The position numbers and the translations under genes are program-made. From positions 310,001 to 374,000 of the forward strand of contig JAWMAR010000424.1 in the NCBI GenBank assembly GCA_036785375.1: a stretch of 64,000 nucleotides of DNA, written 5' to 3'. Below, in pieces: positions 20,890 through 57,823 of this stretch (position 1 is its first letter; each line of letters begins with the position of its first letter). Under the pieces are notes generated by a model. It was not told where the DNA came from. It did not search any database and saw only the letters and a list, made by a program, of their open reading frames with translations. The stretch comes from Leucoraja ocellata. Its lineage: Eukaryota.

Positions 20890-20979
20890 CTTCCTGTTTT
20901 CCTGCAGTTTGATTTTCCAGATTCTCTTTTTCCCTTTTGCCCTCATCGGGACTTCCTGTGGTGCATTCTGAATCCGGCG
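20890..20979 (-). CDS. 90-nt micro-exon type B
   Basis: gttttaatacAG / G|GTAATG; APDSECTTGSPDEGKREKENLENQTAGKQE. Confidence 0.75.
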
Positions 20980-21105
20980 CTGTATTAAAACACAGCAAGG
21001 TGACAACAACTGAACTTAAATGCATGTTGGCCCAAACAGAAAATTCCACATATTTGAGTATTGACCTGAATATTGTATAGAATATTTGCAGGGAATAACT
21101 AAATA

Positions 21106-21966
21106 TAGGTATGTTACAAAACCTACCTGAATCGTGGCTGAGCATCTGCCCCACCCCTTGTGTGTGATTTTGGAGCTGTTTGGAGGGGGCGGGTTTAAAA
21201 CCCGATTTTTACTAGGCTGTTCCAATCGCAGATGTTCAGCCTAGTAAATCATTAACGGAGAATCGCTGCAAGACCCGGTCCCAAAAGCTATTATTAGTTT
21301 TATAGGCCTCGAATAGTAGATATAATAAATTTAAAAACTCTCGTTCAGTTCGCAAGCTTTCGCAGCCCCAGGGTTTTATAAAGCAAACAATTAAAGGTAT
21401 GTACCTTATTTTTACATTAAATGGGGCATGTATATAACCCTATAATTATAATTATCTATAACGAATAGCTCATTTTGGGCTTTTTATATCCCGCAGTATT
21501 TTTCTCGGCATTTGAGGGCACTAATCTAGCGCGCTGTCAACATTCTAAACCTGCGCGTTCACAGAAACCCACTAGAAAACCGATTTAAATGGGCATTTAT
21601 TTACAGCAATTGAACACTAAATTCCTTCCATTTGGCCTATAAATTAATGTAAATTAGATATAAAAATCATGTTATATTGTGAATTATTTGTGAATAATCT
21701 TTGGACACTTAGGCTATTTAAAAATGTTAATCTTTCCTTAAGAAATGTGCTTTTGATTATCCAAGATCACAGCTTTTTTGTAATGCCCATTGAAAATCAA
21801 TAGGGAACAAGATGCTAATTTCCGAGTATGAAAATGGTCATAACTTTTTTAATACTTGAGATATGAAAGTGAATTAGGTGTCAAATTCAACTTATTGTTA
21901 TGCTTTATCTGATGGGATAAATTGCAGACTTGATTTTTTAAATCTCAAAATTTTGTAACATTGCTA
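21106..21966. mobile_element. Second member of the 7-bp-TSD TIR transposon family, opposite orientation
   Basis: TAGGTATGTTACAAAA / TTTTGTAACATTGCTA; TSD CTAAATA. Confidence 0.8.
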
Positions 21967-22136
21967 CTAAATATAAATATAAATAACTCTTCTTCACTTT
22001 GAACCTCATTTGTCTTTAGACTTTTAGATACAGCCCTTCGGCCCACCGAATCCGTGCCGACCAGTGGTCACACCGTACATTAACAATATTCTACACTTTA
22101 ATGACTATTTACAATTTTACCAAAAACAAATTAGGA

Positions 22137-22355
22137 ATGGCACGATGGAGCAGTGGACGAGTTGTTGCCTTACAGCGCCAGTGACCCAGGATCGATTCTG
22201 ACTATGGACACTGTCTGTATGGAGTTTGTACATTCTCCCCGTGACCGCGTGGGTTTTCTCTGGCTGCTCTGGTAGCTCCAGCACTACAGGTTTGTAGGTT
22301 AATTAGCTTTGCTACAAACTGTCCCTGATGTGTGGGATAGTGCTATGTATGGGGA
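22137..22355 (+). mobile_element. HE1/V-SINE-type SINE
   Basis: tRNA-like head with A/B-box-like motifs and V-domain. Confidence 0.7.
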
Positions 22356-22832
22356 TCACTGGTCGGCTCGGACTGGGGAAACCTGGAGTACAAGAGATAT
22401 TGTGGTTCCGGCTGGAGAAAAGGAGGAGTGGATCAGGAAGAAGAGCTGGGATCATGTGAATCCCTGGAGAAGCATCGGATGTAGGAGTTACTTCAGAAGG
22501 AAATTAGAATGAGGAAGAGAAGGCATGAGATCACTTTGGCTGAGAAGATTAAGGAGAATGCAAAGAGTTTTTATAAGTATATGAAGGGGAATAGATAATT
22601 GGATTAGTATCGGATGCAGAATTGGCCTGAAGTTCATTAGTTCATGGAACAGAATTAGGCCATTCAGCCCATCAGAAGCAGAGGGTGACAGTGAAAGATA
22701 CAAGGAACTGTAGATGGTGGTTTACAAAAACATGGACAGTTGGAGTAAGTGGTTCAAGAAGCATCTGTGGAAAACATGGATAGGTAATCTTTCGGGTTGG
22801 GACATTTTTTGGACTAGAGACCCTGGCTAGTG

Positions 22833-23213
22833 GAGTTGACGGAGGAATTGGGAATAGGGGATGGAGTCCTTACAGGAAGTAGGGTGGGAGGAATAGTAGT
22901 CAAGATAGCCGTGGAAGTCAGTGGGTTTATAGTGGATGTCGGTCAGAAGTCTATCACCTGCGATGGAGATTTCTGCATCCTGGTGGAATGAACATTGATT
23001 TCTCACTATTCTGTTAACCCTTGCTGTCTCCTCCCCTTCCTACCTCAGCCCTTGGCCTCCTCCTCCTCCTTTTTTCCTTTCTTCTCCCAGCCTCCCCGCC
23101 TCCCCCCACCCCCTATCAGTCTGAAGAAGGGTTTTGGCCCGAAACGTTGCCTATTTCCTTCGCTCCATAGATGCTGCTGCACCCGCTGAGTTTCTCCAGC
23201 ATTTTTGTGTACC
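22833..23213. mobile_element. Penelope-like insertion: inverted RT fragment plus pLTR
   Basis: Minus strand reads IHYKPTDFHGYLDYYSSHPTSCKDSIPYSQFLR; roughly 12-bp duplication cctg(g/t)ctagtgg; empty paralogous site at about 47893. Confidence 0.8.
23117..23152 (+). ncRNA. Minimal type-I hammerhead ribozyme motif in the Penelope pLTR
   Basis: CTGAAGA-AGGGTTTTGGCCC-GAAA-CGTT core. Confidence 0.6.
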
Positions 23214-23297
23214 TGTCTAGTGGTGTGCCTCCCATTGCTGTTTGTTATCTATATCAATAATTTAGATGAGAATGTACAAGGCATTTTTAGATATTAC

Positions 23298-23720
23298 CTG
23301 AGGTAACTTTGAGGGCTGTAGTATGTATTTCAGACCAAGGGGCATCTGGAGTGTTTGATTTGTGTTCAATATTGATCTGAGCGGCATCGTCCATGGATAA
23401 ATCAGGCTGCACCTTTATACAGCAGTGAATGTGTAGAAGACCCAGATGGTTACGTTGCAATTCAGGCTGATCTGCAGAGAAGGATTTATCTTCATTGCAT
23501 GAATTCAGTATAGTTAGAGGTTGTGTCACCCTTTGTGGTCCCTGCAATTGTTCTGCTGACAACTGCCAGTGAAATAATGTCTTTGCTTCCTCTCCTTTCC
23601 TCTTCAGTGATATAACAATATCCATTGGCACCAGAGTAGTCATGGTCACATCCCAGCTCACATCAGCAGTTTCACCATGTACGACTTCATACTCATTCTT
23701 TATACCACTTATTGCAGGAG
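23298..23720 (-). CDS. Exon: post-TM C1-derived Ig-like domain (copy D2)
   Basis: tctttcAG / G|GTAATA, 423 nt, phase 1-1, open; paralog of 47978-48409 with only in-frame indels (3 and 6 nt). Confidence 0.8.
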
Positions 23721-24021
23721 CTGAAAGATCGACACAAAAAACATTAAATTCAATGTAAACATAATGTTCCATTTTACTGCATTATTGTCCAGCGCATTAT
23801 TCCTTGCATATAATTTACAAACTTCATTCATTTAAACTTAGTTTAGTTTAGAGATACAGCACGGGAACAGTTCTTCAATCCACTGAGTCCGCGCACACCA
23901 GTAACCACTCCATACACTAGTCCTATCCTAAACACTGGGGGCATTTACAGAAGCCAGCACGTAACCCACTGATTCCACACTGACCACCGGTGGATCACCC
24001 CGTAGTTCTGTGTTATTATCC

Positions 24022-24796
24022 GAATGGTGGCCTATTATCTGAATGGTGGCCGATTAGGAAAGGGGGAGATGCAATGAGACCTGGGTGTCATGGTACACCA
24101 GTCATTAAAAGTAGGCATGCAGGTGCAGCAGGCAGTGAAGAAGGCAAATGGTATGGTAGCATTCATAGCAAAAGGATTTATAGGAGCAGGGAGGTTTTAC
24201 TGCAGTTGTACAGGGTCTTGGTGAGGCCACACCTGTAGTATTGTGTACAGTTTTGGTCTCCTAATCTGAGTAAAGATATTCTTGCCATAGAGGGAGTACA
24301 GAGAAGGTTCACCAGACTGATTCCTGGGATGTCAGGACTTTCATATGAAGAAAGACTGGATAGACTCGGTTTGTACTGGCTAGAATTTAGAAGATTGAGG
24401 GGGGATCTTATAGAAACTTACAAAATTCTTAAGGGGTTGGACAGGCTAGATGCAGGAAGATTGTTCCCGATGTTGGGGAAGTCCAGAACAAGGGGTCACA
24501 GTTTAAGGATAAGGGGGAAATCTTTTAGGACCGAGATGAGGAAAACTTTTTTCACACAGAGAGTGGTGAATCTCTGGAATTCTCTGCCGCAGAAGGTAGT
24601 TGAGGCCAGTTCATTGGCTATATTTAAGAGGGAGTTAGATTTGGCCCTTGTGGCTAAAGGGATTAGGGGGTATGGAGAGAAGGCAGGTACAGGATACTGA
24701 GTTGATCAGCCATGATCATATTGAATTGCGGTGCAGGCTCGAAGGGCCGAATGGCCTACTCCTGCACCTATTTTCTATGTCTCTATGTTTCTATGT
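24022..24796 (+). mobile_element. CR1-B 3' fragment
   Basis: ORF 24329-24700; (TTTCTATG)n-type tail. Confidence 0.85.
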
Positions 24797-25009
24797 GTTG
24801 CCCAACATTGTTATCGACTCCCTCCACACTAGGGGCAATTTCCAGAGGGCCAATTAACTGACAAACCCGCACGTCTTAGGGATGTGTGATGAAAACCATA
24901 GAAAACGATGTCAAGAGTTATGGGGAGAAAGCAAGAGATTGGGGTTGAGAGGGTAAGATAGATCAGCATGATTGAATGGCGGAGTAGACTTGAAGGGCAA
25001 AATGTATAA

Positions 25010-26830: not shown

Positions 26831-27953
26831 GCAGTAAAATCACGTGGATGGGTTGTTGCCTTACAGCACCAGTGACCCAGGATCGATTCTGCTAGTGTTG
26901 CTCCTAATTACTTCTTCCAAATCATTAATATATATATGGTAAACAGTTGCGGCCCCAACACCGAGCTTTGCGGCACTCCACTCGCCACTGCCTGCCATTC
27001 TGAAAAGGACCCGTTCACTCCTACTCTTTGCTTCCGGTCTGCAACTAATCTTCTATCCATGTCAACACCCTACCCCCAATACCATGTGCTCTAATTTTAG
27101 CCACCAGTCTCCCATGCGGGATCTTATCAAAGGCTTTCTGAAAGCCTTGGTACACTACATCCACTGGCTCCCCTTCATCCGTTTTGACTTGGACTAATCC
27201 TTTTACTGCTATCCAAATGCCCCATTATTACCTCTTTAATAATTGACTCCAGCATCTTTCCCACCACCGAAGTCAGGCTGAGTCTCTATTCCTTGGAGCG
27301 CAGGAGGATGAGGAGTGATCTCATAGAGGTGTACAAAATCATGATAGGAATAGGTAGATGCACAGAGTCTCTTGCCCAGAATAGGACCAGAGGACATAGG
27401 TTCAAGGTGAAGGGGAAAAGATTTAAGAGGAATCTGAGGGGTAACTTTTTCACACAAAGGGTGGTGGGTGTGTGGAACAAGCTGCCAGAGGAGGTAGTTG
27501 AGGCTTTGACTGTCCCATCATTGAGAAACAGTAAGACAGGTACATGGATAGGACCGGTTTGGGTGATTATGGACCAAGCGCTGGCAGGTGGGACTAGTGT
27601 AGCTGGGACATAATGGCGTGTGTGGGCAAGTTGAGCCGAAGGAACTGTTTCCACACTGTATCACTGAATGACTGTGACTATGACTACATGCTGTGCAGGT
27701 TTTATACACAGTGGGAGGTGGGTGGTGGGTGGCTGGAACGCACTGCCAGGGGTGGTGGTCGAGGCTGATACGAAAGTGGCATTTAAGAGGCTTTTGGATC
27801 GACACAGGTGTATGCTGGGAATGGAGGGATATGGGTTATGTGCAGGTAGCTAATTGATGGTCTTGGCATCATATCCATCACAGACATTGTGGGCTGAAGG
27901 GCCGGTTCCTGTGCTGTACTGTTCTATGTTCAATATTTCAGCAAAATCATTAC

Positions 27954-28043
27954 CTTCCTGTTTTCTTGCACTTTGTTTTTCCTGATTCTCTTTTTCCATT
28001 TTACCTTCATCAAGATTTCTTGTTGCGACATCTGAATCCGGTG
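27954..28043 (-). CDS. 90-nt micro-exon type B
   Basis: gttttaatacAG / G|GTAATG; APDSDVATRNLDEGKMEKENQEKQSARKQE. Confidence 0.75.
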
Positions 28044-28258: not shown

Positions 28259-28348
28259 CTTCACTTGCTCCTGCATTTTGGGTATCCTGCCTCTCTGTCT
28301 CCTGCTCACCTTCATCACAACTCCCTGTGGCAGCATCTGACTTGGGCA
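28259..28348 (-). CDS. 90-nt micro-exon type A
   Basis: tttaaatacAG / G|GTCAGG; VPKSDAATGSCDEGEQETERQDTQNAGASE; a CR1 tail lies about 30 nt upstream of the acceptor. Confidence 0.65.
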
Positions 28349-36676: not shown

Positions 36677-36766
36677 CTTCCTGTTTTACTGCTCTTTGTT
36701 TTTCCCGATTCTCCTTTTCCCTTTTACCCTCATCGGGACTTCCTGTGGTGACATATGAATCTGGCG
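36677..36766 (-). CDS. 90-nt micro-exon type B
   Basis: gttttaatacAG / G|GTAATG; APDSYVTTGSPDEGKREKENREKQRAVKQE. Confidence 0.75.
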
Positions 36767-36981: not shown

Positions 36982-37071
36982 CTTCACTTGGTCCTGTATT
37001 TTGGATATCCTGCCTCTCTGTGTTCTGTTCACCTTCATCACAACTCCCTGTGTCAGCATCTGACTTGGGCA
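36982..37071 (-). CDS. 90-nt micro-exon type A
   Basis: tttaaatacAG / G|GTAAGT; VPKSDADTGSCDEGEQNTERQDIQNTGPSE. Confidence 0.75.
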
Positions 37072-40234: not shown

Positions 40235-40324
40235 CTTCCTGTTTTACTGCACTTGGATTTTCCAGATTCCTTGCTTGATTTTCATTCTCATCGGGACTTC
40301 CTGTGGTGACACCTGTAACCGGCG
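40235..40324 (-). CDS. 90-nt micro-exon type B (divergent)
   Basis: ttttaatacAG / G|GTAATG; APVTGVTTGSPDENENQARNLENPSAVKQE (not in the ORF track). Confidence 0.7.
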
Positions 40325-40809: not shown

Positions 40810-43800
40810 TGTTTTGATATATGTTTGCTTACAAAATAAGTAAACTAGCACATAATATACAGAGAAAGATGGCTGCACACACACTCGTGTTGGGATCAAA
40901 ACAGGAATGATTTATTTCCAAGTCAAAGGTCCTGACTGATTTACTAAGCATGTGCACGAATGAGTACAGCTCATACGCATAAGTTACATGGATATGTCAT
41001 ATCCTTTCCTTTTTGACATTTTGGGATTACATTTCCAACGATCCAAAACAAAGTAAACTTAAACACTTTTCATAATATTACACCGTAGTAATATGGTTTA
41101 ACAACAAAATAAAACAACTGTTCTGTCTTATCTCACAATTTCAATCATAGTCACACTTGTGACATTTCAATAACATAAAATAATGTTCACATGCTTTCTT
41201 CTCATAAGCATGTAGGTACAGCGCAATGAAACACATTACTTTGTGACATACTCGCCGTACCTCTCCGCCGGGCCGACAGCTCTTCCTGCCCTAGTCTTTG
41301 TGATGGTGTTTCTTTCAAGTGTCTTCTTTTCAGTGTGTACATTCTGTGCATCACTTCTAGTTTCTTCTCTTGTGCCACTTTGTTTTTGTTTAGATTTCTC
41401 TGTGTTATGAGTTTCACAAGTTGCATCTTTTTCTGGTGATGCTTGTTGTGTTGGTATATTTTGTGTCAGCTGAGGTTGCAAAGGTTTCTCAGTCTTCTCC
41501 GCGACTGGTAGTTTCTCAGGAGTTATGTGTGGGGGTAGTTCTCCGGTCTTCTTCAGATCCACTCGTCGGATTAGAAGTCCTGACTCTGCCTCGACTTCGT
41601 ATGATCTCTCATCCAGTCGTCTCTGAACTGTTGCTCTCTGCCATCTGGTATCTTCTAGTTTATAGGGTTTGAGTCTTACAACATCACCTTCTTCCAGGAT
41701 TGGCAGATCCTTGGCATGTTGGTTGTAGATTTTTGACTGTTTTCCTTGCAAATCCTTCATCTTTTTCCTCTCTTCTGTGAGTATCTCAGCACCACGCGGT
41801 TTGAGGAGGTTTTGAACCCTGGGTTGAATTTGCTAGGACTTGGGGAAGCTTTATGCAACATTTTCACACAATATAAATTGTCCCCTCTCCAACTGTTATA
41901 ATAATTCTTTTACCTTCATAGGTGAAACGGACTTGACGACAAACAGGGACGGACTTGACGACAAATTCTTTGCAGCCCAGATTCTGTTTTGCTTTTTTTT
42001 CTAGTTTAGGGGCTTTTGTTTTTCTCTTTTTTCTTTTTTTTCTTTTTATCTTTTTGTTTTTATATATACAAGTTCTCTTTTAAACACTTAACTATATTTA
42101 CATAGAGACCGGGAGGTCTATACTCAATGTGTATTTTGACACTGGACTCATATTTAGGTTCTACTTGTTATTTATGTAATCCTGATCCCTATGTATCAAT
42201 ATCATTGTTGTGTTTATCATTATTTTAATTTTTTTTTTGTTTTGTTTTTGTTTTTGAAAAAAACGAATAAAAACATTATAAAAGCCAAAAAAATAGGTTA
42301 GATGTAGTTGGAAGTGTCTTTCTTGTTCTCCTTCCATGTAATCTTTGTTCCAGACTACTGTTCACTCCCTCAAGTCCCACTTTCTCGCATGGTTGATCTG
42401 GGAGGTCATGGGGCATCAGAGTTTCTTTCTGATTCTGTTGTTCGTGCGTCCTGCAGGCTTCACAGTTTGAAATGAACTGCTTCACATCAGAGTTCATTCC
42501 GGGCCAGAAAATGCATTCTCTAGCACGTATGGGGGTTCCTTCCACTCCCAGGTGAGAGATGTGGAGTGTCTTCTTCATATCTTTGTGTAGAGTGACAGGG
42601 ATTACAACTCTCTCTCCTGTGAATAATAGGCCGTCTTGCACACTCAACTCGTCTCTGACGTTGAAGTATGGTGGTGCTGCCTCTGGGACTTCTGCCTTGT
42701 GATCTGGCCATACATTTTGGATTACTCTCTTAACTGTTTGTAGTGTTTCATCTTCCCTGATATGGGCTTGGATGCGTTTCACCTTGTCCTCTCCCATGCT
42801 CAAGGACTCAACTACGTTGACATCAGTGAATCTGGTTGATCCTGTGGTGTCAGGGGGTATGCTCGGGAGAACATATCTGCTAGATGCATGTCGTTTCCCT
42901 TTACCCACTTGATCTTGATGTCATTGTGTAGCATCCTCATCATCATGCCATGGAAACGTCTTGATCCTCTATGCAGAGGCTTTTTGACAATGACTTCCAA
43001 CGGCTTGTGGTCACTCTGAATGATCACTCTCTGTCCGTAGGTTTTACTGATGGAAGCGCTAGAGGGCAAACACTATTGCTAGTGCCTCCTTCTCAATCTG
43101 AACATATCTCTGCTCGGTTGGTGTCAATGTTCGACTCACATAGGACAGTGGTTGTTCTTTCTGCATGAGTGTTGCACCTAGACCTTCGTTGCATCACATT
43201 GTATGGTCAGCTGTTCGTCTGGTGTGTAGTACACCAGGATAGGTGCCGTTGTCAACAGCTCCTTGATCTTTGACATTGCCATGTCATGTTCTGATGACCA
43301 TTCCCACTCTGCTTCCTTGTGGGTCAATCTCCTCAAAGGCTCGAATGTGTCCGACAACATTGGCAGGAATCTTGCCAAGTAGTTTACACTGCCTTGTAAT
43401 CTTTGGATTTCTGTTGGATTGGTTGGTTTGGGCATCTCTAGGATAGCTTGGATCTTCTTCGGATCCGGTTCCAGGCCACGATCTGTAACTATATGTCCTA
43501 AATGTGATACATGTAGTTTTCACTGCCGACTTCTTCCGGTTCAGCTTGATCGCTCTGTCTCTGTATCGTTGAAGAAGATCTTGCAGTCTTGCATCGTGAT
43601 TCATTTCTGCATCTTCTCTGGTGTCCCCTACTCCGAATAGGATGATGTCATCTGCAACACATTCCATTCCCTTTCATCCTTCTAGTGCTTGTTGCAGCTT
43701 CTTCTGGAAGATCTCTGCACTTACTTTCTGTCCAAGTGGCCACCTCTTCCAACGATATCTCACAAAAGGAGTGTTCATGATTGTTAGGAAATTGCTCTCC

Positions 43801-45522
43801 TCATCTAGTTCACAGTGGAGGTATCCTGACTTCAGATCGAATCTGGAAAAAATCTTTGCCGGACAGCCAAGGGAGTACATCCTCTATGATAAGTAGTCTG
43901 TGGATCTCCCTTTTCAGGACTTTGTTGAGGGGTCTAGGATCTATGCAGAACCTCAACTCTGTTCTGTTCTTTTACTCCGTAACGACCAGTCTGCTACACA
44001 ACTCAGTTGGTTCTTCGACTTGAGTCAAGATGTCCTGCTCGACCAGCTTCATGAGACCATTCATGACCTTCTCTTTCATGGCTACAGGTACCGGCTTTGC
44101 AGGACACTGTGATGGGGTCACATCCTCCAACCTAGTTACCAACTTGACCTTGTCAGGCAGTCTCCCAGGTCTTTCCTCATCAAAGATATCTTTGTAGCTT
44201 GAGTAATGAGCCAGCCTCGCTAACAGCATTCAGGCTCTTGAAGTTCTCGTAGTGAACCGTGATGAGTTTCATCAGTTGTGCAGCTTTGCCGCTCAGGAGC
44301 GATGTGAGCCAGCCTTCCTCTAACACTATGAGGTGAACACGGTACTTCTTGTTCTACGGCTTGAAGTACGACTTTCATCCTACCTTCTGCCAGCAGGTTG
44401 GATCCGTTGTACATCTTTAAGATGATCTTCTTTCGATTAATGTCCTCATTGTTGGGTATAAGATCCTTGGAAATCACATTAACACTAGCACCAGAGTCAA
44501 TCTGAAACATGATGGCTTCTGTGCCGACCTGCATCTCAGCAAATAGGCCTGAAGAGGAATTGTTTCCAGCTGCATTGATCTCAATGCAACTCCCAAACTC
44601 TGTGTCGGAAATGGACGTTGTGTCAGATGTCTCTACGACCTTGTGCGGACCCCGTTTCTGCATGCTCTCCTTCCTCTACGTGCAGCAGCGGGTGAAATGG
44701 TTTTGTCGTCCGCATCTGTTGCAGTCCTTCCCATACGCTGGGCATTCCTCTTTCCTACGTTTGTATCCTTGCACAAAACTTACACTTGACTAGTCCCTGA
44801 TTCTTCCTCTGCGTAGGAAAATCAACCATCTTTTCCCTCAGTTTGAATCGTTCCACCTTGTTTATTGTCGGCTCTTCGCCGATGACCTGCATTCTTGCTG
44901 CTGTTACCTCCGAGGATCTACATATGTCCACAGTCTTCTGCAGTGTCAGATTCCTCTTCTGAAGGAATGTCTTTCTAGTTGATTGGTCCTCAATACCAAT
45001 GACGATGCGATCTCGAATGAGGCTTTCGCTCAGGCACTCAGAAGTTGCATGTTTTAACAAGTTCCTTCAGCTCTGCAACATACGATTCAATGCTTTCCCC
45101 TGATTTCTGGTCTCGTTTATTGAAAATGAATCTTTCATACGTTTCATTCGTCTCTCCTATGATGATGGTCGACATCTTGTGGATGATAACTTTCACATCC
45201 GTTTCATCTGCTACCGTTTCGAATGGCAGGGTATTGAAGATTCGCAGTCCTTCCGGTCCAACAGAATGCAGGAATACTGCTATTTGATACAGTTTCTCTT
45301 TCCTATCCAGTTCTGTTATCACTGCATAATTTTCAAACATATGTCTACTTACAAAATAATTAAACTAGTACATAATATACAGAGAAAGATGGCTGCATAC
45401 ATACTCGTGTTGGGATCAAAAACAGGAATGATTTATTTCTAAGTCAAAGGTCACTGACTGACAATGAGCATGTGCAAGAATGAGTACAGCTCATACGCAT
45501 AAATTACATGGATATTGTCACA
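40810..45522 (-). mobile_element. Gypsy LTR retrotransposon, degenerate near-full-length
   Basis: TG..CA ends; 5-bp TSD ATATC (40805-40809, 45523-45527); about 190-bp LTRs; PPT AAAAAGGAAAGGA at 41002-41014; gag-PR(DSGA)-RT(ADD)-RH(CDA/DHKPL)-IN order. Confidence 0.95.
41812..42294 (+). mobile_element. L1/Tx1-type LINE 3' end inserted in the Gypsy
   Basis: FARTWGSFMQHF* C-terminus, T-rich UTR, AATAAA plus A tail, TSD AGGTT. Confidence 0.65.
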
Positions 45523-46157
45523 ATATCCCTCCAAACCTGTCCATGTACCTGTCGAACAGTGTCTTAAATTTTGTGATAGTCCCCGTCTTAACTACCTCCT
45601 CTGGCAGCTTGTTCCATACACCCACCACCCTCTGTGTAAAAAGGTTACCGCTTAGATCTTTTCCCTTTCACCTTAAACCTATGTCCTCTGGTTCTCAATT
45701 CACCTAATCCGGGCAAGAGACTCTGTGCATCTACCCGATCTATTCCTCTCATGTTCCTATACACCTCTGTAAGATCACCCATCATCCTCCTGCACTCCAA
45801 GGAATAGAGTCCCAGAGTACACAACCTCTCTCTGTAGCCCACACCCTCTAGTGTTCTGCACTATGACTCTGTGACTATGACTATGTGTGGGGCAGGTTTT
45901 ATACACAGAGGGTGGTGGGTGGTAGGTGGTGGGTGACTGGAACGTGCTGCCAGGGGTGGTGGTGGAGGCAGATACGATAATGGCATTTAAGAGACTTTTG
46001 GATAGACACATGGATATGCTGGGAATAGAGGGATATGGGTTATGTGCAGTTAGCTAATTGATGGTCTTGGCATCATGTTCAGCACAGACATTGTGGGCTG
46101 AAGGGCCTGTTCCTGTGCTGTACTGTTCTATGTTCAATATTTCAGCAAAAGCATTAC

Positions 46158-46247
46158 CTTCCTGTTTTCCTGCACTTTGTTTTTCCTGATTCTCTTTTTC
46201 CATTTTACCTTCATCAAGATTTCTTGTTGCAACATCTGAATTTGGCG
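46158..46247 (-). CDS. 90-nt micro-exon type B
   Basis: gttttaatacAG / G|GTAATG; APNSDVATRNLDEGKMEKENQEKQSAGKQE. Confidence 0.75.
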
Positions 46248-46454
46248 CTGTATTAAAACACAGCAAGGTGACAACAATTGAAGTTGAATGCATGTAGTCC
46301 CCAATAGAAAATTCCACATATTTGAGTACTATTTGTATATAATATTTGCAAGGATTAACTAAATATAAATCATGTACAGTCTGCAGACAGTGGTTGGACA
46401 TCAAATGCCACTGAAAGGCCAACAATACTCTGGATCCTTTGAGAAATGTCGTAC

Positions 46455-46544
46455 CTTCACTTGCTCCTGCATTTTGTGTGTCCTTCCTCTCTGTCTCTTG
46501 TTCACCTTCATCACAACTCCCTGTGGCAGCATCTGACTTGGGCA
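46455..46544 (-). CDS. 90-nt micro-exon type A
   Basis: tttaaatgcAG / G|GTACGA; VPKSDAATGSCDEGEQETERKDTQNAGASE. Confidence 0.7.
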
Positions 46545-47399
46545 CTGCATTTAAACAAATGAAAGTCTCTCAGATATGATAATGGCAACACAGCCTGAGA
46601 CAAGGTTTATGAGAAGCTGGATCACACCTCAAGGAACTTCATTATTCTTCCCCACAGTGAAGTCTTCATCTGCCGAAGGATCTGTATCTCACTCCTGCAG
46701 AAAATACCTTCAACTCTTCTTTACTTTGAACCTCATTTGTCCTTAGACTTTAGAGATAGAGCCCTTTGGCCCATCGAGTCTGCGCTGACCAGTGATCACC
46801 CTGTACACTAACACTATCCTACACTTTAACGACTATTTACAATTTTACCAAACACAATCAGGGTTTTCTCCGGCTGCTCCGGTTTGCTCCCGCACTCCAT
46901 AGACGTACAGGTTTGTAGGTTAATTGGCTTTGGTACAAACTGTCCCTGATGTGTGGGATAGTGCTATGTATGGGGATCAATGGTCGGCACGGACTGGGGA
47001 AGCTTGGAATACAAGAGATATTGTGGTTCCGGCTGGAGAAAAGGAGGAATGGACCAGGAAGAAGAGCTGGGATCACGTGACTCCCTGGAGGAGCACTATT
47101 TACTTCAGAAGGAAATTAGAACGAGGTAGAGAAAGTTGAGAAAGTTAAGGAGAATGCAAAGAGTTTTTACAAGTATATGAAGGGGAATAGAGAATTGGAT
47201 TAGTATAGGATGCAGAATTGGCCTGAAGTTCATAAGTTCTTGGAGCAGAATTAGGCCATTCAGCCCATCAGTATTCACTGCCATTCAATGACGGATGAAG
47301 CAGTGGAAAACACAAGGAACCGTAGATGCTGGTTTACATTAACATGGGCACAAAGTGCTGGAGTAAGTGGTTCAAGTAGCATCTGTGGAAAACATGGAT

Positions 47400-47853
47400 A
47401 TGTCATATGAGGAAAGATTGAAAAGACTAGGCTTGTATTCACTGGAGTTTAGAAGGATGAGGAGGGTTCTTATAGATACATCTCCAATTATAAAAGGACT
47501 GGACAAGCTAGATGCAGGAAAAATGTTCCCAATGTTGGGCGAGTCCAGAACCAGGGGCCACAGTCTTAGAATAAAGGGGAGGTCATTTAAAACTGAGGTG
47601 AGAAAAAACTTTTTCACCCAGAGAGTTGTGAATTTATGGAATTCCATGCGACAGAGGGCAGTGGAGGCCAAGTCACTGGATGGATTTAAGAGAGAGTTAG
47701 ATAGAGCTCTAGGGGCTAGTGGAGTCAAGGGATATGGGGAGAAGACAGGCACGGGTTATTGATAGGGGACGATCATCCATGATCACAATGAATGGCGGTG
47801 CTGTGTTGAAGGGTCGAATGGCCTCCTCCTGCACCTATTTTCTATGTTTCTAT
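47400..47853 (+). mobile_element. CR1 3' fragment
   Basis: ORF 47367-47762; tttctatg tail; absent from the 22.8-kb paralog. Confidence 0.85.
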
Positions 47854-47977
47854 GTAATCTTTCGGGTTTGGACCTTTTTTGGACTTGAGACCCTGTCTAG
47901 TAGTGTGCCTCCCATTGCTGTTTGTTATCTACATCAATGATTTAGAAGAGAATGTACAAGGCATTATTAGATATTAC

Positions 47978-48409
47978 CTGAGGTAACTTTGAGGACTGCA
48001 GTGTGCATTTCAGACCAAGTGGCACCTGGAGTCTTTGATGTGTGTTCAATATTGATCTGAGCAGCATCGTCCATGGATAAACCAGGCTGCACCTTAATAC
48101 AGCAGTGAATGTGTGGAAGACCCATATGGGTAAGTTGCAATTCAGGCTGATCTGCGGAGAAGGATATACGGGTATCTTGCTTGCATGAATGAGGTATAGT
48201 TTTCAGAGGTTGTGTCACCCTTTTAGGTCCCTGCAATTGTTCTGCTGACAACTGCCAGTGAAATAATGTATTTGTTTCCTCTCCTTTCCTCTTCAGTGAT
48301 ATAACAATATCCATTGGCACCAGAGTAGTCATGGTCACATCCCAGCTCACATCAGCAGTTTCACGATGTACAACTTCATACTCATTCTTCATACCACTTA
48401 TTGCAGGAG
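47978..48409 (-). CDS. Exon: post-TM, C1-derived Ig-like domain lacking canonical cysteines (copy D1)
   Basis: ctatctttcAG / G|GTAATA, 432 nt, phase 1-1, open: APAISGMKNEYEVVHRETADVSWDV...IKVQPGLSMDDAAQINIEH...VLKVTS. Confidence 0.8.
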
Positions 48410-48857
48410 CTGAAAGATAGACACAAAAAAATTTAAATTCAATGTAAATGTAATGTTCCATTTTACTGCATTATTGTCCAGCGCATTATTCCTTGCATAT
48501 AATTTACAAACTTCATTCATTTAAACTTAGTTTAATTTAGAGATACAGCACGGGAACATTTTGTCGACCTACTGAGTCCGTGCCCACCAGTAACCACTCC
48601 AAACACTAGTCCTATCCTAAACACTGGGGGCATTTACAGCAGCCAGCCTGTAATGACGTTGGAGCTCCCGACTCAGCCTCTCCCGAGACTGCGAGCCCTT
48701 GATGGTGAGTTCGCAGGCCGCGGTGGGAGCGATACCAGGCAAGGGATCCACTCCGATGTTAAGTCCGCGCCCCGCGGTGGGGCTCACGACAGTCCAAGGA
48801 GGCCTCCAGCTCCATCGATGGTAGGCCGCAGAGCCCGGAGAATGTGATCCGAAAATT

Positions 48858-49678: not shown

Positions 49679-49859
49679 ATCTGCGGGATGGTAAGAACTT
49701 GAAAAAACGTTTCCCCCCAATCCCCCCCCCCCCCCCCTCTCCTCCCACATAAAACATGCCAAAGAACATTAAAACAAAACTTTTAACAAACTAAAAATAA
49801 CAAAATGAAAGAAAAAACGAACAGACTGCCGGCAGGGCTGCCATCTCCCTGGCACCCGT

Positions 49860-51200: not shown

Positions 51201-51796
51201 CAATGACTCTGCAGTAAAATCACATGGTTTACGTTCAGGTTTATTAATGTCACATGTACAGAGATACAGTGAAAAGCTTTGTTTTGCAGGCAACCTACCA
51301 GATCAGTTGTACACAGACACAAAATGGGTCAGGAGGCATCTCTGGATAGAAGGAATGGGTGATGTTTCAGGTGAGATACAGATCAGATGTACCAGGCATA
51401 AATGTGTAGGGTTCCAAACAGTAAATTTGCATATTTGTGAATTTTCCTGATAGAAGTTATAAATATAATCGTGGATAGACTATCAACAGCTTTTTTCCAG
51501 GATGGAAAAATCATATACTAGAGGGCACAGCTTTAAGATGAGAAGGGCAAATGTTGAAGATGTGTGGGGTAGGTTTTATAAACAGTGGATGGTGGGTGAC
51601 AAGAACGCACGGCCAGGGCTGGTGGTGGAGGCTGATACGATAGTGGCATTTAAGAGACGTTTGGATAGACACATGGATATGCTGGGAATGGAGGGATATG
51701 GGTTATGTGCAGTTAGCTAATTGATGTTCTTGGCATCATGTTCAGCACAGACATTGTGGGCTGAAGGGCCTGTTCCTGTGCTGTACAGTTCTATGA

Positions 51797-54445: not shown

Positions 54446-54465
54446 TGTTTCAGTAAAAGCATTAC

Positions 54466-54529
54466 CTTCCCATTTTCCTGCACTTTGATTTTCCAGATGC
54501 ATTGCTTGCCTTTCGCCCTCATCGGGACT
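54466..54529 (-). pseudogene. 5'-truncated 90-nt micro-exon (type B), acceptor lost
   Basis: SPDEGERQAMHLENQSAGKWEG plus G|GTAATG donor; the 5' third and acceptor are replaced by CR1-tail sequence. Confidence 0.7.
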
Positions 54530-54830
54530 AATGTAGCTGGGACATGTTGGCCGGTGTGGGCAAGGTGGGCCGAAGGGCCTGTTTCCAAGCTGTATCATTG
54601 TATGACTGTTTGATTATGAATGGCCAATTTCTATAACCTATAACCTATGAACTTATGAACATGGAGAAAACCCGCACAGTCACAGAGAGAACGTGCAAAC
54701 TCCATACAGACAGCACCCGTGGTTTTGTACTAATGTTTCAAAACTTGGTTTAAAAGTTCATCTAATTGTGTGTGTCGTGGGAAGAATAGGAATCTTGTAT
54801 TCGATATAATTAATCACCATAATCAATTAC

Positions 54831-54908
54831 CTCGTGCAGTTTGTGAGCCCGTCTTGGCGATAAGTGGTGTACGGTTTGGGTCTTCAACGTCCGTTGTATT
54901 TACCTGTC
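54831..54908 (-). CDS. Exon: juxtamembrane linker
   Basis: ttgtttatgttgttcAG / G|GTAATT, 78 nt, phase 1-1, open: GQVNTTDVEDPNRTPLIAKTGSQTAR. Confidence 0.75.
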
Positions 54909-55142: not shown

Positions 55143-55244
55143 CTTTAAATAACTTCTTCCACGTATAAAATGCTATGCACACAACACAGAGAAATATGCC
55201 GATGCCACAGATGCCTCCGATAATCAGCATCATTTTTCCACGTT
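55143..55244 (-). CDS. Exon: transmembrane segment
   Basis: gttttaacAG / G|GTAAAC, 102 nt, phase 1-1. ERGKMMLIIGGICGIGIFLCVVCIAFYTWKKLFK is a hydrophobic run followed by a basic stop-transfer. Confidence 0.85.
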
Positions 55245-56058
55245 CTGTTAAAACAGGCATAGATCTATGAAAACGTGAATAATAAATATACTAGGCCATT
55301 TACAACATTCATCAGAGACACTAGAATCTGCAGATGCTGGAATCTTGAACAAAACACAAAGTGCTGGAGGACTCAGTGGGTCAGGCAGCATCTGTGGAGG
55401 GAACATCACCTCTCCATTCCTTCCACAGATGCTGCCTGACCCGTTCAGTTCCTCCAGCATTTTGATTTATGTACAATATTCCACAGAATGTATCACTAAC
55501 TTATTCTACTTATCAGATTGGTTTAATCCCTCATGGAATTGGTGTAGTTCTGGTCACCCCATAACATAAAGAATGTGGAGGCTTTGGAAAGCGTGCAGAA
55601 GAGGTTTATCAGAGCGCTTGCTTGGATTAGGGGGATCAGCTACACTGAGAGGTTGGACAGATTTGGATTGTTTTCTTTGGAATGACGGAAGTGGAGGGGA
55701 GAACTGATGGAAATATATACAATTGTGAGAGAAATAGATACGGTGCAGTCAGAATTTTTTCCCAGGGTGTATTAGTGAGAATCTGGAGAGCATAGTTTTA
55801 AGGTGAGAAGAGTAAAGTTTAAACAAGATGTACAGGGCATGTTTTTAAACAGAGAGTGGATGCCGTGAACTGCACTGCTATGTGTGGTGGAGGCAGATAT
55901 GAACGATAGTGGCGTCTGGGAGGTTTATAAATAGACACATGGATATGCAGGGAATGGAGGGACATGGGCCACACACAGGCAGAGAAGATGAGTTTATCTT
56001 GGCATCATGTTCAACACTGTGGGCCAAAGGGCCTGCTCCTGTGCTGTACTGTTCTAGG

Positions 56059-56189
56059 TTATGTACTTAACTGGTACATATTGTGTTTATTTCCCGGGTG
56101 TGAAACAGCTGCAGCATTTAAGATTCCAAGGATTGTACATATCATCACCATGATGCAGATTATAATCAAAGAGTAATTTGATTTCTGGT
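56059..56189 (-). CDS. Candidate additional/alternative transmembrane exon
   Basis: cttttattcaaAG acceptor; phase-1 frame DQKSNYSLIIICIMVMICTILGILNAAAVSHPGNKHNMYQLST*. The only symmetric donor is weak (A|GTACAT, exon end 56067); otherwise it reads to the TAA ending at 56059. Confidence 0.55.
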
Positions 56190-56299
56190 CTTTGAATAAA
56201 AGAAGCAATAGATTGACTTAAATGGCCAGGAATGTGTTAATAATCCTTGATTTGATGAATTGTATTGAATTGAATTGAGAGATTGAATTGATTGATCAG

Positions 56300-56592
56300 A
56301 CCCTAAAGCCCACCAAGACCATGCTGACCATCGATCACCTGTTCACACTAGTTCTATGTTATCCCACTTTCTCATCTTCTCCCTACAAACTAGGGGCAAT
56401 TTACAGAGGGCCAATTAACCTACAATCCTGCACGTCCTTGTGATGCTGGTGGAAATTGGAGCACCCGGAGGAAACCCACGTGGTCACAGGGAGCACGGGC
56501 AAACTCCACACAGACGGCACCCGTGGTCAGGATCGAACCTCGGTCTCTGGAGCCATGAGGCAGCAACTCTCCTTGATGCAATTCTGTGCTGC
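56300..56592 (-). mobile_element. HE1/V-SINE-type SINE
   Basis: tRNA head gagaccgaggttcgatcctg plus V-domain. Confidence 0.7.
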
Positions 56593-57511
56593 CCCAGACT
56601 CTGGGAATGATCAGTGGTCCTAGATATATGGCAATCTGCAAAGTTGTATATATCTAGATTAATTGTCTAGAACCTGACTTGTTAGATATAACCAGACAAA
56701 CATTGAACCGGTGGTGATTCAACTGTGGAACACTGCTCATTGCCCTGAATCCATTTTGCCGCTGAGCCACACACTGACTCCATCAGTGAAACAGTTATCT
56801 CCAGAGCTGAGGGTCCTGATGCACTTCACATCTGGCCCCTCACTTCATTCATGGATGATGTACATCAGCGCTCATTACAAAAGGCTGACACCTCTAATTA
56901 TTTAATTATTAAATGTGTATTGAATCATGAGAGGAATAGATGGGGTGGATGCACAGAGACTTTTACCCCCCAGCCAAGGGGAATCAAGAACCAGGGGACA
57001 TAGGTGAGTGGGGAAAGATAGGAAGCTGAGGGGAAACGGTCACATTCAGAGGGCGGTGGATAAATGGAACAAGCTGCCAGAGGAGGGAGTTAGGGCTGGT
57101 ACTATAACAGCATTTAAAAGATTTTTGTACAGTACATGGATAGGAAAAGTTTAGAGGGATAAGGGCCAAATGCTTAGATAAGTTCGAATTCATATGATAG
57201 GCGCAGAATTAGGCAATTCAGACTAATTCATCAAGTCTACTCCACCTTTCAATTATGGCTGATCTATCTTTCCCACCCAATCCCAATCTCCTAGCTTGTC
57301 CCCATAACCCCGACACCCGTACTAATCAAGAATCCAACAATCTGCCTTAAAAATGCTCAATGACTTGACCTCCACAGTCATCTGTGGCAATGAATTCCAC
57401 AGATTCACCGCCCTCTGACTAAAGAAATTCCTCCACATCTGTCTAAAGGTGCGTCCTTGATTCTGAGGCTGTAGCCTCTGGTCCTAGACTCTCGCACTGT
57501 GTTCAACTCAC

Positions 57512-57823
57512 CTGTCACGATGAGAGAAGGTTCTATTGTGAGACCATTCAGTAATGTTTGATGTGTCACAATGCATCTGTATTGATCACCATTATCCTTC
57601 AATGTCGGGTGAATCTTCAGTTCACTCTCAGCATTGAAAGTGCGATCACCATTGGCAGTGATTTGAGTTGTATAGTTAGTCATGGAAACATTTCTTCTTC
57701 CTGTTATCTTCACCCAGGTGATCTTTATCGGTCGAGGATAAAATCCACTGGCTTTGCATGTCAGAGAAACTTCTGAACCTTTCTCAGTTGTGATGGACTG
57801 TGTCAATATAACGTTTGGTCGAG
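57512..57823 (-). CDS. Exon: Ig C1-set domain of a B7/B7-H6(NCR3LG1)/tapasin-like membrane protein
   Basis: tttaatgcAG acceptor, G|GTGAGT donor, 312 nt, phase 1-1. ARPNV..SLTCKASGFYPRPIKITW..NGDRTFNAESELKI..YRCIVTH has the canonical C1 Cys/Trp/Cys and FYP motifs. Confidence 0.9.

What the first reader, a model, noticed from the sequence alone, without database searches (positions are those of the whole stretch)
20890..57823. Hidden B7/B7-H6-like receptor with a very large modular post-TM region
Seen: 13 minus-strand exons, all AG/GT and phase 1-1, splice into 2067 nt with no stop. The order is C1(312)-TM(102)-linker(78)-D1(432)-A-B-B-A-B-A-B-D2(423)-B. Known: C1 plus TM is the membrane-proximal part of B7-family/tapasin-like proteins, which usually have short tails. 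Inference: this is a type-I immune-surface protein with more than 550 aa C-terminal of the TM (basic WKKLFK suggests cytosolic), made of Ig-derived domains and acidic repeats. The V domain and leader should lie beyond 64000.
Basis: partly seen in the sequence, partly recalled or inferred. Interest (0 to 1): 0.85.

Follow-up and report, generated by a model that had tools for sequence, protein, structure and literature searches.

The report
Shark-type B7-H6 gene with Ig-domain tail
This is part of a real cartilaginous-fish immune-surface gene related to the NK-cell ligand B7-H6 whose long region after the membrane anchor is built from degenerate antibody-like domains and acidic spacers, an unusual and so far uncharacterised design.

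Summary
All 13 minus-strand exons have AG/GT borders, phase 1-1 and no stops, and they sum to 2067 nt.

- The 143-aa D exon hits 16 proteins among 1.84 billion representatives. 15 are RefSeq or UniProt models from 11 chondrichthyan species.
- Ten of these models have the layout IgV-IgC1-TM followed by 1-8 D domains.
- The ectodomains of two of them match human NCR3LG1/B7-H6 best among solved structures.
- A Rhinoraja model has the same TM-linker-D-A-B order as the window.
- D is a C1-set-derived Ig-like domain without the canonical disulfide.

Three things are not shown. Exon usage in this species is unknown, because the only available runs gave no exon-exon joints. The cytosolic location is unproven: a Heterodontus isoform skips exactly the TM exon. 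The use of all duplicated exons is also open, since D1 versus D2 gives dN/dS 0.73.

No paper describing this tail was found, but the key shark B7H6 papers were not readable.

The parts
57512..57823 (-). IgC1 (membrane-proximal) exon, 312 nt, phase 1-1
   Evidence: Pfam C1-set 1.1e-14. 51% identical to the C1 of the Scyliorhinus torazame family member P0003 and 43% to Callorhinchus P0007. AG/GT borders and frame checked.
55143..55244 (-). Transmembrane exon (LIIGGICGIGIFLCVVCIAFY followed by WKKLFK), 102 nt, phase 1-1
   Evidence: Aligns to the TM of Rhinoraja P0002. Because of its phase, skipping it would keep the frame. The Heterodontus isoform P0019 lacks exactly this exon.
54831..54908 (-). 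Linker exon, 78 nt (QVNTTDVEDPNRTPLIAKTGSQTAR)
   Evidence: 70% identical to residues 266-292 of Rhinoraja P0002, which lie directly after its TM. Borders checked.
54466..54527 (-). Truncated B-like exon remnant (62 nt, out of phase), not part of the 13-exon model
   Evidence: Found by tblastn. The sequence read shows its 5' part replaced by an interspersed-repeat-like sequence.
47978..48409 (-). D1: C1-set-derived, disulfide-less Ig-like domain exon, 432 nt
   Evidence: phmmer gave 16 hits among 1.84e9 representatives, 15 of them chondrichthyan. hhalign against the family C1 profile: probability 92.7%, E 4.2e-7. No Pfam hit for the exon itself.
46455..46544 (-). A1 acidic micro-exon, 90 nt
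   Evidence: Matches the A-type modules of Rhinoraja P0002 (about 60-70% over alignments that run into the preceding intron) and of Leucoraja P0014.
46158..46247 (-). B1 mixed-charge micro-exon, 90 nt
   Evidence: Paralogous to A (48% aa identity).
40235..40324 (-). B' micro-exon, 90 nt (divergent B type)
   Evidence: 93% identical to residues 63-92 of the Leucoraja erinacea XP_055505898 model, so this exon type is used in a gene model.
36982..37071 (-). A2 micro-exon, 90 nt
   Evidence: 93.5% identical to Leucoraja P0014 residues 123-153.
36677..36766 (-). B2 micro-exon, 90 nt
   Evidence: 90% identical to Leucoraja P0014 residues 153-182.
28259..28348 (-). A3 micro-exon, 90 nt
   Evidence: 96.6% aa identity to A1.
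27954..28043 (-). B3 micro-exon, 90 nt
   Evidence: 93% aa identity to B1.
23298..23720 (-). D2: second copy of the D domain exon, 423 nt (two short in-frame gaps, 1 + 2 codons, relative to D1)
   Evidence: 82.5% aa identity to D1. 79% identical to the Rhinoraja D domain. dN/dS against D1 is 0.73.
20890..20979 (-).
   Evidence: 73% identical to Rhinoraja P0002 residues 528-557.
43414..48647 (.). Segmental duplicate 1 (D1-A1-B1 plus downstream retroelement remnants), partner of 18231-23958
   Evidence: Self-blastn gives direct matches at 85-92% identity, introns included; see also repeat finder.
18231..23958 (.). Segmental duplicate 2 (D2-B4; the A exon is missing here). It abuts the assembly gap 18031-18230
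   Evidence: No A-type hit lies between 21107 and 22285.
56067..56189 (-). Extra TM-like open exon (123 nt, phase 1-1) between C1 and TM. Weak candidate, not counted in the model
   Evidence: No tblastn match from any family protein was reported over it (searched with P0002 and P0014), and no family model has a second TM. A repeat-like sequence follows it directly.

Best explanation
The stretch is the C1-to-tail part of a real gene of a family restricted, so far, to cartilaginous fishes. It encodes a type-I IgSF surface protein whose ectodomain (IgV, which lies outside the window, plus IgC1) is of the B7-H6/NCR3LG1 kind.

After a single TM helix and a basic stop-transfer comes a modular region. 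It alternates ~30-aa acidic or mixed-charge spacers (A and B micro-exons) with ~140-aa 'D' modules. D is an Ig C1-set domain that has lost both canonical cysteines and gained an insert of about 35 residues.

Every exon is phase 1-1, so duplication, loss or skipping of any exon keeps the reading frame. In this genome, probably a skate, the array grew by recent segmental duplications (about 8-18% divergence between copies) and is riddled with transposon insertions.

Inferred, not shown:
- The ectodomain is displayed as a ligand for NKp30-like receptors.
- The D/spacer array sits in the cytosol as a scaffold or inside-out regulatory module, comparable in logic to the B30.2 domain of butyrophilins or the FnIII repeats of the integrin beta-4 tail.
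- A TM-skipping isoform, modelled in Heterodontus, would instead secrete the whole chain.
- Probably only a subset of the 13 exons is used in any one mRNA.
For: Exon anatomy: 13 of 13 exons have AG/GT borders, phase 1-1 and no stops. The C1 exon hits Pfam C1-set at 1.1e-14.

Homologues of D1: phmmer found 16 proteins among 1.84e9, and 15 were looked up and are chondrichthyan (Heterodontus, Rhinoraja, two Scyliorhinus, two Mobula, Stegostoma, Callorhinchus, Hemitrygon, Heptranchias, Leucoraja).

Family architecture: in the 10 of 14 examined models that have a TM, a single TM lies before the first D, and each carries 1-8 D domains.

Same exon order as the window: Rhinoraja P0002 reads TM, linker, part of D, A, D, A, then B five times. 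It matches the window's linker at 70%, D at 74-79% and A/B mostly at 50-76%. Leucoraja models use A, B and B' modules that are 87-93% identical to the window's best-matching D-end, A2, B2 and B' exons.

B7-H6 relationship: the best solved relative of P0002 and P0003 is human NCR3LG1 (2.5e-23 and 2.1e-24). CD276 follows at about 1e-13 to 1e-15 and TAPBPR at about 1e-9 to 1e-10.

D is C1-like:
- hhalign against the family C1 profile gives probability 92.7%, E 4.2e-7 over 99 columns.
- Controls: reversed C1 profile 0.1%, family V profile 3.5%.
- Pfam C1-set scores 68.7 bits on the tail-only Callorhinchus P0025.
- The Atlas model of a Scyliorhinus canicula D aligns to C1-set and tapasin clusters at TM 0.75 and 0.66.

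Topology hints: sequons per 100 aa are 1.72 in ectodomains against 0.60 in D domains and 0.62 in spacers. A tryptophan replaces the B-strand cysteine in 15 of 15 aligned D domains.
Against: There is no transcript evidence from this species.
- The look-up of sequencing runs found no holder on record as RNA.
- In the four 'RNA?' contig sets laid on 45950-48650, A1 and the upstream part of B1 (the five bins 46223-46677) had zero depth, and the bin holding the rest of B1 was mostly repeat.
- D1 had only two short contigs, both from another organism.
- No exon-exon joint was seen.

Within the window the duplicates show no detectable purifying selection. D1 versus D2 gives dN/dS 0.73 (8.5 synonymous and 22.5 nonsynonymous changes), and exon identity is about equal to intron identity. 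Some copies may therefore be unused.

The model is open at both ends: no stop codon, terminal exon, V exon or leader is in the window.

The window's C1 exon on its own matches Ig heavy-chain constant domains and UrIg2 better than NCR3LG1.

D1 and D2 have no Pfam hit, and a D profile finds nothing in the PDB at E<=1.

Some relatives (Leucoraja, S. canicula, Mobula hypostoma) are modelled as tail-only proteins without V, C1 or TM.

The homologous models are automatic predictions, and I could not inspect their RNA support.
Confidence: 0.75

Rival explanations
1. Only the first unit is used (C1-TM-linker-D1-A1-B1, perhaps B'). The further A/B pairs and D2-B4 are young, unused or decaying duplicates, so the real tail is much shorter than 550 aa. 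This refines the best explanation rather than replacing it.
For: D1 versus D2 gives dN/dS 0.73, and the exons are no better conserved than the introns. One B-like exon near 54.5 kb is already truncated. The A exon is missing from the second duplicate. Introns of 4-9 kb are full of LINE and retroelement ORFs. No terminal exon follows B4.
Against: 13 of 13 exons keep an open frame and both splice sites. The indels between D1 and D2 are in frame. Relatives do carry many repeats: 7 D domains in Heterodontus, 8 in Callorhinchus, and 5 or more B modules in Rhinoraja and Leucoraja.
Confidence: 0.4
2. The D/A/B array is a separate transcription unit that encodes a cytosolic tail-only protein, not joined to the C1-TM gene in this species.
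For: Leucoraja erinacea LOC129705962 (7 or more isoforms), S. canicula XP_038661993 and Mobula hypostoma XP_062919169 are modelled without V, C1 or TM. A 6.4-kb transposon-rich intron separates the linker from D1.
Against: Those tail-only models start inside a D domain, so they look like truncated predictions. Ten models from nine species join the TM to D, including the skate Rhinoraja with the same linker exon as the window. The linker exon has a good donor in phase 1 that fits the D1 acceptor.
Confidence: 0.12
3. The D domains work outside the cell. This could happen through a secreted isoform that skips the TM exon, or through a second TM exon (56189-56067) that would flip the tail to the outside.
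For: Heterodontus isoform X3 (XP_067902349) lacks exactly the 31 residues of the TM exon and keeps the frame. The window's TM exon is phase 1-1. D is of Ig origin, and Ig domains are typically extracellular. An extra TM-like phase 1-1 open exon exists.
Against: All D copies lack the canonical disulfide. Sequon density in D and spacers is at about the level expected by chance (my estimate is about 0.5 per 100 aa) and three times lower than in the ectodomain. No family model has a second TM, and the extra exon has no homologue.
Confidence: 0.2
4. The exons are chance open frames in repetitive DNA.
For: They lie in duplicated, transposon-rich DNA, and each B exon is followed about 30 nt later by an interspersed-repeat-like sequence.
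Against: Cross-species protein matches reach 2e-194 for D. The linker, A, B and B' exons match at 59-93% with the same order and the same junction residues as RefSeq models.
Confidence: 0.01

Closest known systems
Human B7-H6 / NCR3LG1 (ligand of NKp30)
   Same: It is a type-I protein with a membrane-distal IgV, a membrane-proximal IgC and one TM (passages seen in PMC6514059). It is the best solved relative of the family's ectodomains. It also has an unusually large, non-standard tail for a B7 protein.
   Different: The human tail is GAG-polyprotein-like and carries ITIM, SH2-binding and SH3-binding motifs (passage seen in PMC2715080). Here the tail is made of C1-derived Ig-like domains and acidic micro-exon spacers. 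The window's V domain is unseen, and NKp30 binding is untested.
RefSeq 'uncharacterized protein' models of cartilaginous fishes (e.g. Rhinoraja longicauda XP_078271721, Heterodontus francisci XP_067902347-52, Scyliorhinus torazame XP_072322181, Callorhinchus milii XP_042197527 / XP_042197504 / XP_042197506)
   Same: They share the window's D domain, TM and linker. The skates also share its A/B modules and exon order.
   Different: The window's C1 groups with the S. torazame and Callorhinchus type, not with the Rhinoraja type, although its D groups with Rhinoraja. The number and order of modules differ. In Callorhinchus the D domains follow each other without acidic spacers.
Butyrophilins (BTN/BTNL)
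   Same: They work alike in layout: a B7-related IgV-IgC ectodomain, one TM, then a large folded intracellular domain. This comparison rests on established knowledge and is recalled, not tested here.
   Different: Their intracellular domain is B30.2 (PRY/SPRY). No such Pfam hit was found in any tail exon or in four scanned family proteins. The window's gene is not a member.
Integrin beta-4
   Same: It is a type-I membrane protein whose cytoplasmic tail carries beta-sandwich (FnIII) repeats that act as a scaffold (recalled, not tested). It serves as a functional analogy for a cytosolic beta-sandwich array.
   Different: It is an unrelated family with FnIII rather than Ig C1-derived domains. No sequence relation was tested or claimed.
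Ig C1-set domain (Pfam PF07654) / tapasin, TAPBPR, UrIg
   Same: D aligns over its whole length to the family's C1 profile. Callorhinchus D copies pass the Pfam C1-set threshold. Structural neighbours of a D model are C1-set, tapasin and TAPBPR clusters. The window's true C1 exon is closest to UrIg2 and Ig heavy-chain constant domains in the PDB.
   Different: D has W in place of the B-strand Cys, no F-strand Cys and a ~35-residue insert after the C strand. It lies after the TM. D1 and D2 themselves fail Pfam.

Membership tests
B7-H6 / NCR3LG1-like B7 family member | N-terminal IgV domain after a leader | not testable with these tools
   No V-like exon and no family match lies in 57824-64000. 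It must lie beyond the window if it exists. Homologues have one.
B7-H6 / NCR3LG1-like B7 family member | Membrane-proximal Ig constant-type domain | tested here: met
   Pfam C1-set 1.1e-14, and also C2-set_2 (CD80-like) 4.8e-8.
B7-H6 / NCR3LG1-like B7 family member | Single transmembrane helix directly after the IgC domain | tested here: met
   The TM exon 55244-55143 has a hydrophobic core followed by WKKLFK. It is homologous to the TM of P0002.
B7-H6 / NCR3LG1-like B7 family member | NCR3LG1 is the closest characterised relative by sequence | tested here: inconclusive
   Met for the full-length homologues P0002 and P0003 (6yjp_C at 2.5e-23 and 2.1e-24, ahead of CD276 and TAPBPR). For the window's C1 exon alone, NCR3LG1 scores 1.8e-11 but UrIg2 and Ig heavy chains rank higher.
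B7-H6 / NCR3LG1-like B7 family member | Binds an NKp30-type receptor | not testable with these tools
   This needs a binding assay.
Chondrichthyan V-C1-TM-[D]n family (unnamed; RefSeq 'uncharacterized') | D domain (~140 aa; W22, KRKGE, LFHW, SFxAxxP, conserved C102) | tested here: met
   D1 matches family members at 2e-194 to 5.5e-14. The invariant columns are listed.
Chondrichthyan V-C1-TM-[D]n family (unnamed; RefSeq 'uncharacterized') | D domains encoded downstream of the TM exon on the same strand and in a compatible phase | tested here: met
   for phase and order. The order is the same in Rhinoraja P0002 and in 10 of 14 examined models.
Chondrichthyan V-C1-TM-[D]n family (unnamed; RefSeq 'uncharacterized') | TM and D exons joined in mRNA of this species | tested here: inconclusive
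   No run on record as RNA holds D1, and no exon-exon joints were seen in the four runs laid.
Ig C1-set domain (for the D module) | Sequence match to the C1-set profile | tested here: inconclusive
   D1 and D2 have no Pfam hit at E<=10, and the D profile has no PDB hit at E<=1. Against that, hhalign to the family C1 profile gives 92.7% probability, E 4.2e-7, with clean controls, and Callorhinchus D copies score 68.7 bits on PF07654.
Ig C1-set domain (for the D module) | Canonical B-F strand disulfide | tested here: not met
   W stands at the B-strand Cys position in 15 of 15 aligned D domains. In the hhalign alignment the F-strand Cys column of C1 faces a non-Cys residue in D. A few Callorhinchus copies keep the B-strand Cys only.
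Ig C1-set domain (for the D module) | Ig beta-sandwich fold | tested here: inconclusive
Butyrophilin | Intracellular B30.2 (PRY/SPRY) domain | tested here: not met
   No such Pfam hit in the six window exons scanned or in P0007, P0017, P0023 and P0025.

The most novel reading that the evidence does not exclude
Cartilaginous fishes have kept, since before the chimaera-shark split, a B7-H6-like NK-ligand lineage in which copies of the gene's own C1 exon were moved behind the TM exon. These copies lost their disulfide and became a cytosolic Ig-domain array. The array would couple the inside of the cell to display of the ligand, as an inside-out sensor or scaffold like butyrophilin B30.2.

A cassette TM exon would toggle the same chain between a membrane form, with the array inside, and a secreted multi-Ig form. 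The tails are exchanged or homogenised between old ectodomain paralogues: the C1 tree and the D tree disagree.
Probability: 0.3. Interest if true: 0.8.

Novelty: new variant of a known kind. Interest (0 to 1): 0.62.

Why it matters
B7-family and NK-ligand proteins are usually thought of as ectodomains with short or signalling-motif tails. This family has one to eight Ig-derived domains behind the membrane anchor. It is conserved across chimaeras, sharks, rays and skates, and every public record I saw calls it 'uncharacterized'.

- It would be a rare case of Ig-superfamily domains recruited to the cytosolic side of an immune surface protein.
- It offers a natural example of exon shuffling across a TM exon made possible by uniform phase 1-1.
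- It gives the old NKp30/B7-H6 co-evolution story a testable new component, namely what the tail binds.

For this window in particular it shows how fast such arrays grow and decay by segmental duplication.

Tried and rejected
Steps that led nowhere or were discarded:
- **C1 exon protein search.** The search for homologous proteins found nothing. Its length window excludes full-length relatives, so the blank means little.
- **Contaminated hhalign run.** The first run gave E 6e-30, but my C1 template wrongly included weak D-domain pieces. I discarded it and repeated with 9 strong C1 rows only.
- **D profile against the PDB.** There were 0 hits at E<=1.
- **Pfam on D1, D2, A1 and B1.** No family was found.
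- **Terminal exon.** I looked for C-terminal motifs of relatives and ran tblastn of all fetched proteins on 1-20800 and 57901-64000. Only chance-level hits appeared.
- **Inverted unit at 800-7539.** It has no D, A or B exon, and I could not identify a last exon there.
- **RNA test.** Only 'RNA?' contig sets were offered, and interspersed repeats in the introns dominated them. The result neither supports nor refutes expression.
- **Literature.** Five searches found no paper describing a post-TM Ig array in shark B7H6-like genes.
- **Unreadable papers.** Flajnik et al. 2012 (Immunogenetics 64:571) and Ohta & Flajnik 2015 were not held, so an earlier description cannot be excluded. Supplements were not consulted.
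- **Chance ORFs.** Rejected as an explanation.
- **Butyrophilin membership.** Rejected, because there is no B30.2 domain.

Full report
**1. What is in the sequence**

The window is transposon-rich vertebrate DNA with one assembly gap at 18031-18230.

| Exon | Coordinates | Length |
|---|---|---|
| C1 | 57823-57512 | 312 nt |
| TM | 55244-55143 | 102 nt |
| linker | 54908-54831 | 78 nt |
| D1 | 48409-47978 | 432 nt |
| A1 | 46544-46455 | 90 nt |
| B1 | 46247-46158 | 90 nt |
| B' | 40324-40235 | 90 nt |
| A2 | 37071-36982 | 90 nt |
| B2 | 36766-36677 | 90 nt |
| A3 | 28348-28259 | 90 nt |
| B3 | 28043-27954 | 90 nt |
| D2 | 23720-23298 | 423 nt |
| B4 | 20979-20890 | 90 nt |

- All 13 of 13 exons have AG/GT borders, a length divisible by three, phase 1-1 and no stop. 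The sum is 2067 nt.
- I did not build or search the joined model. Searches were exon by exon, and only the 12 junction codons were translated.
- The junction residues agree with the residues at the matching places of relatives, for example ..VTS-V-PKSD.. and ..ASE-A-PDS.. in P0002.

**2. The locus is a young, decaying array**

- Self-comparison shows a direct segmental duplication, 18231-23958 against 43414-48647, at 85-92% identity with introns included. The A-B units with their flanks are repeated 3-5 times at 82-90%.
- D1 versus D2 shows 8.5 synonymous and 22.5 nonsynonymous differences, which gives dN/dS 0.73. Exon identity is about equal to intron identity. Since the duplication there is therefore no measurable constraint.
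- One B-like exon at 54527-54466 is truncated and out of phase. The second duplicate has lost its A exon.
- Introns hold LINE-type reverse-transcriptase ORFs and retroelement remnants.
- No V exon, leader, stop codon or terminal exon is in the window.

**3. What it is**

- *C1 exon.* It is a C1-set Ig domain (Pfam 1.1e-14).
- *D1 homologues.* A search of 1.84 billion representative proteins with the 143-aa D1 exon gave 16 hits.
  - I looked up 15 of them. All are from cartilaginous fishes: Heterodontus francisci, Rhinoraja longicauda, Scyliorhinus torazame, S. canicula, Mobula hypostoma, M. birostris, Stegostoma tigrinum, Callorhinchus milii (5), Hemitrygon akajei, Heptranchias perlo and Leucoraja erinacea.
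  - The 16th hit (E 4e-4) is a repetitive protein that I did not look up.
  - Nearly all are named 'uncharacterized protein'. A cluster-mate of one Callorhinchus hit (P0022, grouped with P0015) is named 'natural cytotoxicity triggering receptor 3 ligand 1-like'.
- *Family architecture.* Of 14 family models examined, 10 have a TM. In all 10 a single TM lies between the ectodomain and the first D, and they carry 1 to 8 D domains. The other 4 are tail-only models that start inside or at a D domain.
- *Same exon order in a skate.* Rhinoraja XP_078271721 reads TM, linker, part of D, A, D, A, then B five times. It matches the window's linker at 70%, D1 and D2 at 74% and 79%, and the A/B exons mostly at 50-76%. 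Leucoraja LOC129705962 isoforms use A, B and B' modules that are 87-93% identical to the window's best-matching D-end, A2, B2 and B' exons.
- *B7-H6 relationship.* Among solved structures, P0002 and P0003 match human NCR3LG1/B7-H6 best (2.5e-23 and 2.1e-24). CD276 follows at about 1e-13 to 1e-15 and TAPBPR at about 1e-9 to 1e-10. The window's C1 exon alone is less specific: UrIg2 and Ig heavy chains rank above NCR3LG1, which scores 1.8e-11.

**4. The D module**

- Neither Pfam nor a D profile against the PDB recognises D1 or D2.
- Profile-profile comparison links D to the family's own C1 domain over its whole length: probability 92.7%, E 4.2e-7, 99 columns. A reversed C1 profile gives 0.1% and the family V profile gives 3.5%. 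An earlier value was contaminated and is withdrawn.
- Pfam C1-set scores 68.7 bits on a Callorhinchus protein that consists only of D domains, matching their N-terminal halves.
- The Atlas's model of a catshark D domain has Ig clusters (C1-set, tapasin, TAPBPR) as structural neighbours at TM 0.58-0.75. The by-feature scores of 0.86 are only a lead.
- D has W where C1 has the B-strand Cys in 15 of 15 aligned domains. In the hhalign alignment it has no Cys at the F-strand position. It also has an extra ~35 residues carrying the conserved KRKGE and LFHW motifs.

**5. Where the tail sits (inferred)**

- Each full-length model has one TM followed by basic residues; here that stretch is WKKLFK.
- N-glycosylation sequons number 1.72 per 100 aa in ectodomains but 0.60 in D domains and 0.62 in spacers. 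By my rough estimate the latter two are about what chance gives.
- Together with the lost disulfide, this fits a cytosolic array.
- Against a simple picture, Heterodontus isoform X3 lacks exactly the 31-residue TM exon and stays in frame. That predicts a secreted V-C1-[spacer-D]7 chain, and the window's TM exon has the same symmetric phase.
- An extra TM-like open exon at 56189-56067 has no homologue, and I give it little weight.

**6. Expression in this species: not resolved**

- No run on record as RNA holds D1. The high-share holders are probably the genome's own DNA runs.
- I laid 45950-48650 on the four 'RNA?' contig sets at 88% likeness.
  - Signal came only from interspersed repeats in the introns.
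  - A1 and the upstream part of B1 (the five bins 46223-46677) had zero depth; the bin holding the rest of B1 was mostly repeat.
  - Two short D1-like contigs came from another organism (130 nt with 14 mismatches; 118 nt with 4).
  - No exon-exon joints were seen.
- Contigs show presence, not absence, so this neither supports nor refutes the model.

**7. An extra observation**

- The window's C1 is 51% identical to the S. torazame C1 and 43% to a Callorhinchus C1, but only 33-34% to the C1 of the skate Rhinoraja. Its D is 77% identical to the Rhinoraja D and 43% to the catshark D.
- In trees of 9 rows each, C1 places the window with S. torazame (support 96/95) and Callorhinchus (96/97), apart from Rhinoraja plus the rays. 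D follows taxonomy: window plus Rhinoraja at 100/99, and batoids at 99/98.
- This suggests old ectodomain paralogues whose tails are exchanged or homogenised within lineages.
- Caveats: the window's C1 sits on a long branch, the trees have few rows, only the first full D of each protein was used, and the root is at the midpoint only.

**8. Comparison with what is known**

- Human B7-H6 is a 454-aa type-I protein with IgV and IgC. Its intracytoplasmic domain is homologous to GAG polyprotein and carries ITIM, SH2-binding and SH3-binding motifs (passages seen in PMC2715080, and PMC6514059). The ectodomain type is shared, but the tail is unrelated.
- Butyrophilins and integrin beta-4 are analogies for a large folded cytosolic domain behind an Ig or adhesion ectodomain. 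These are recalled. Membership in the butyrophilins is excluded because there is no B30.2 domain.
- Five full-text searches found no description of this tail. The two most relevant papers could not be read, and supplements were closed.
- The scan itself noted a similar gene on another piece of this genome (s1-884593). I did not test that note.

**9. Verdict**

- The gene is a new variant of a known kind: a B7-H6-like protein with a post-TM Ig-derived array. Relatives are already present but uncharacterised in public annotation.
- Open points are the exon usage in this species, the topology and the function of the tail.

Noticed in passing
window 56067-56189 (-): A TM-like open exon (123 nt, AG/GT, phase 1-1, YSLIIICIMVMICTILGIL) lies between the C1 and TM exons. 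It is followed directly by a repeat-like sequence. It has no homologue in any family protein, so it is probably spurious.
   Followed up: partly
window 800-7539 (+) versus 46561-51728 and 21985-25799: This is an inverted copy of intronic or repeat segments of the locus at 84-96% identity. It has no D, A or B exon: the homology stops just before the place where A1 would lie. I could not find the 'last exon' another note places here.
   Followed up: partly
window 20800-20860, 27870-27925, 36590-36650, 46070-46130, 54580-54620, 56020-56060 (-): The same interspersed-repeat-like sequence (translated ..EQYSTGTGPSAH..) starts about 30 nt after the donor of every B exon. It also occurs next to the truncated B remnant and next to the extra TM-like exon. 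In the read data it is extremely abundant.
   Followed up: no
window 28462-33137 (-), 60261-61605 (-), 3504-4820, 13723-16500: Several LINE-type endonuclease/reverse-transcriptase ORFs of up to 560 aa, 91-97% identical to each other, sit in the introns and flanks. This looks like a recently active family.
   Followed up: no
window 51904-54285 (+): A different retroelement lies on the opposite strand inside the linker-to-D1 intron, with ORFs of 305 and 299 aa (endonuclease-like and RT-like).
   Followed up: no
window 41236-45340 (-) and 18231-20000: Remnants of an LTR-retroelement-like gag/integrase region lie downstream of B1. They are duplicated together with the D-B unit.
   Followed up: no
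proteins P0017, P0001, P0019, P0020, P0018 (Heterodontus francisci): The RefSeq isoforms differ by cassette use. X3 skips the TM exon. P0020 (X4) and P0018 lack the V domain. X2 lacks one C-terminal spacer.
   Followed up: partly
family trees: The C1 tree and the D tree disagree. The window's ectodomain type groups with the catshark and chimaera, while its tail type groups with the skate Rhinoraja. This hints at concerted evolution or exon exchange of tails between old paralogues.
   Followed up: partly
window ~8400-8480 (+): A (CA)n-type microsatellite, read as a THTHTH.. run in translation.
   Followed up: no
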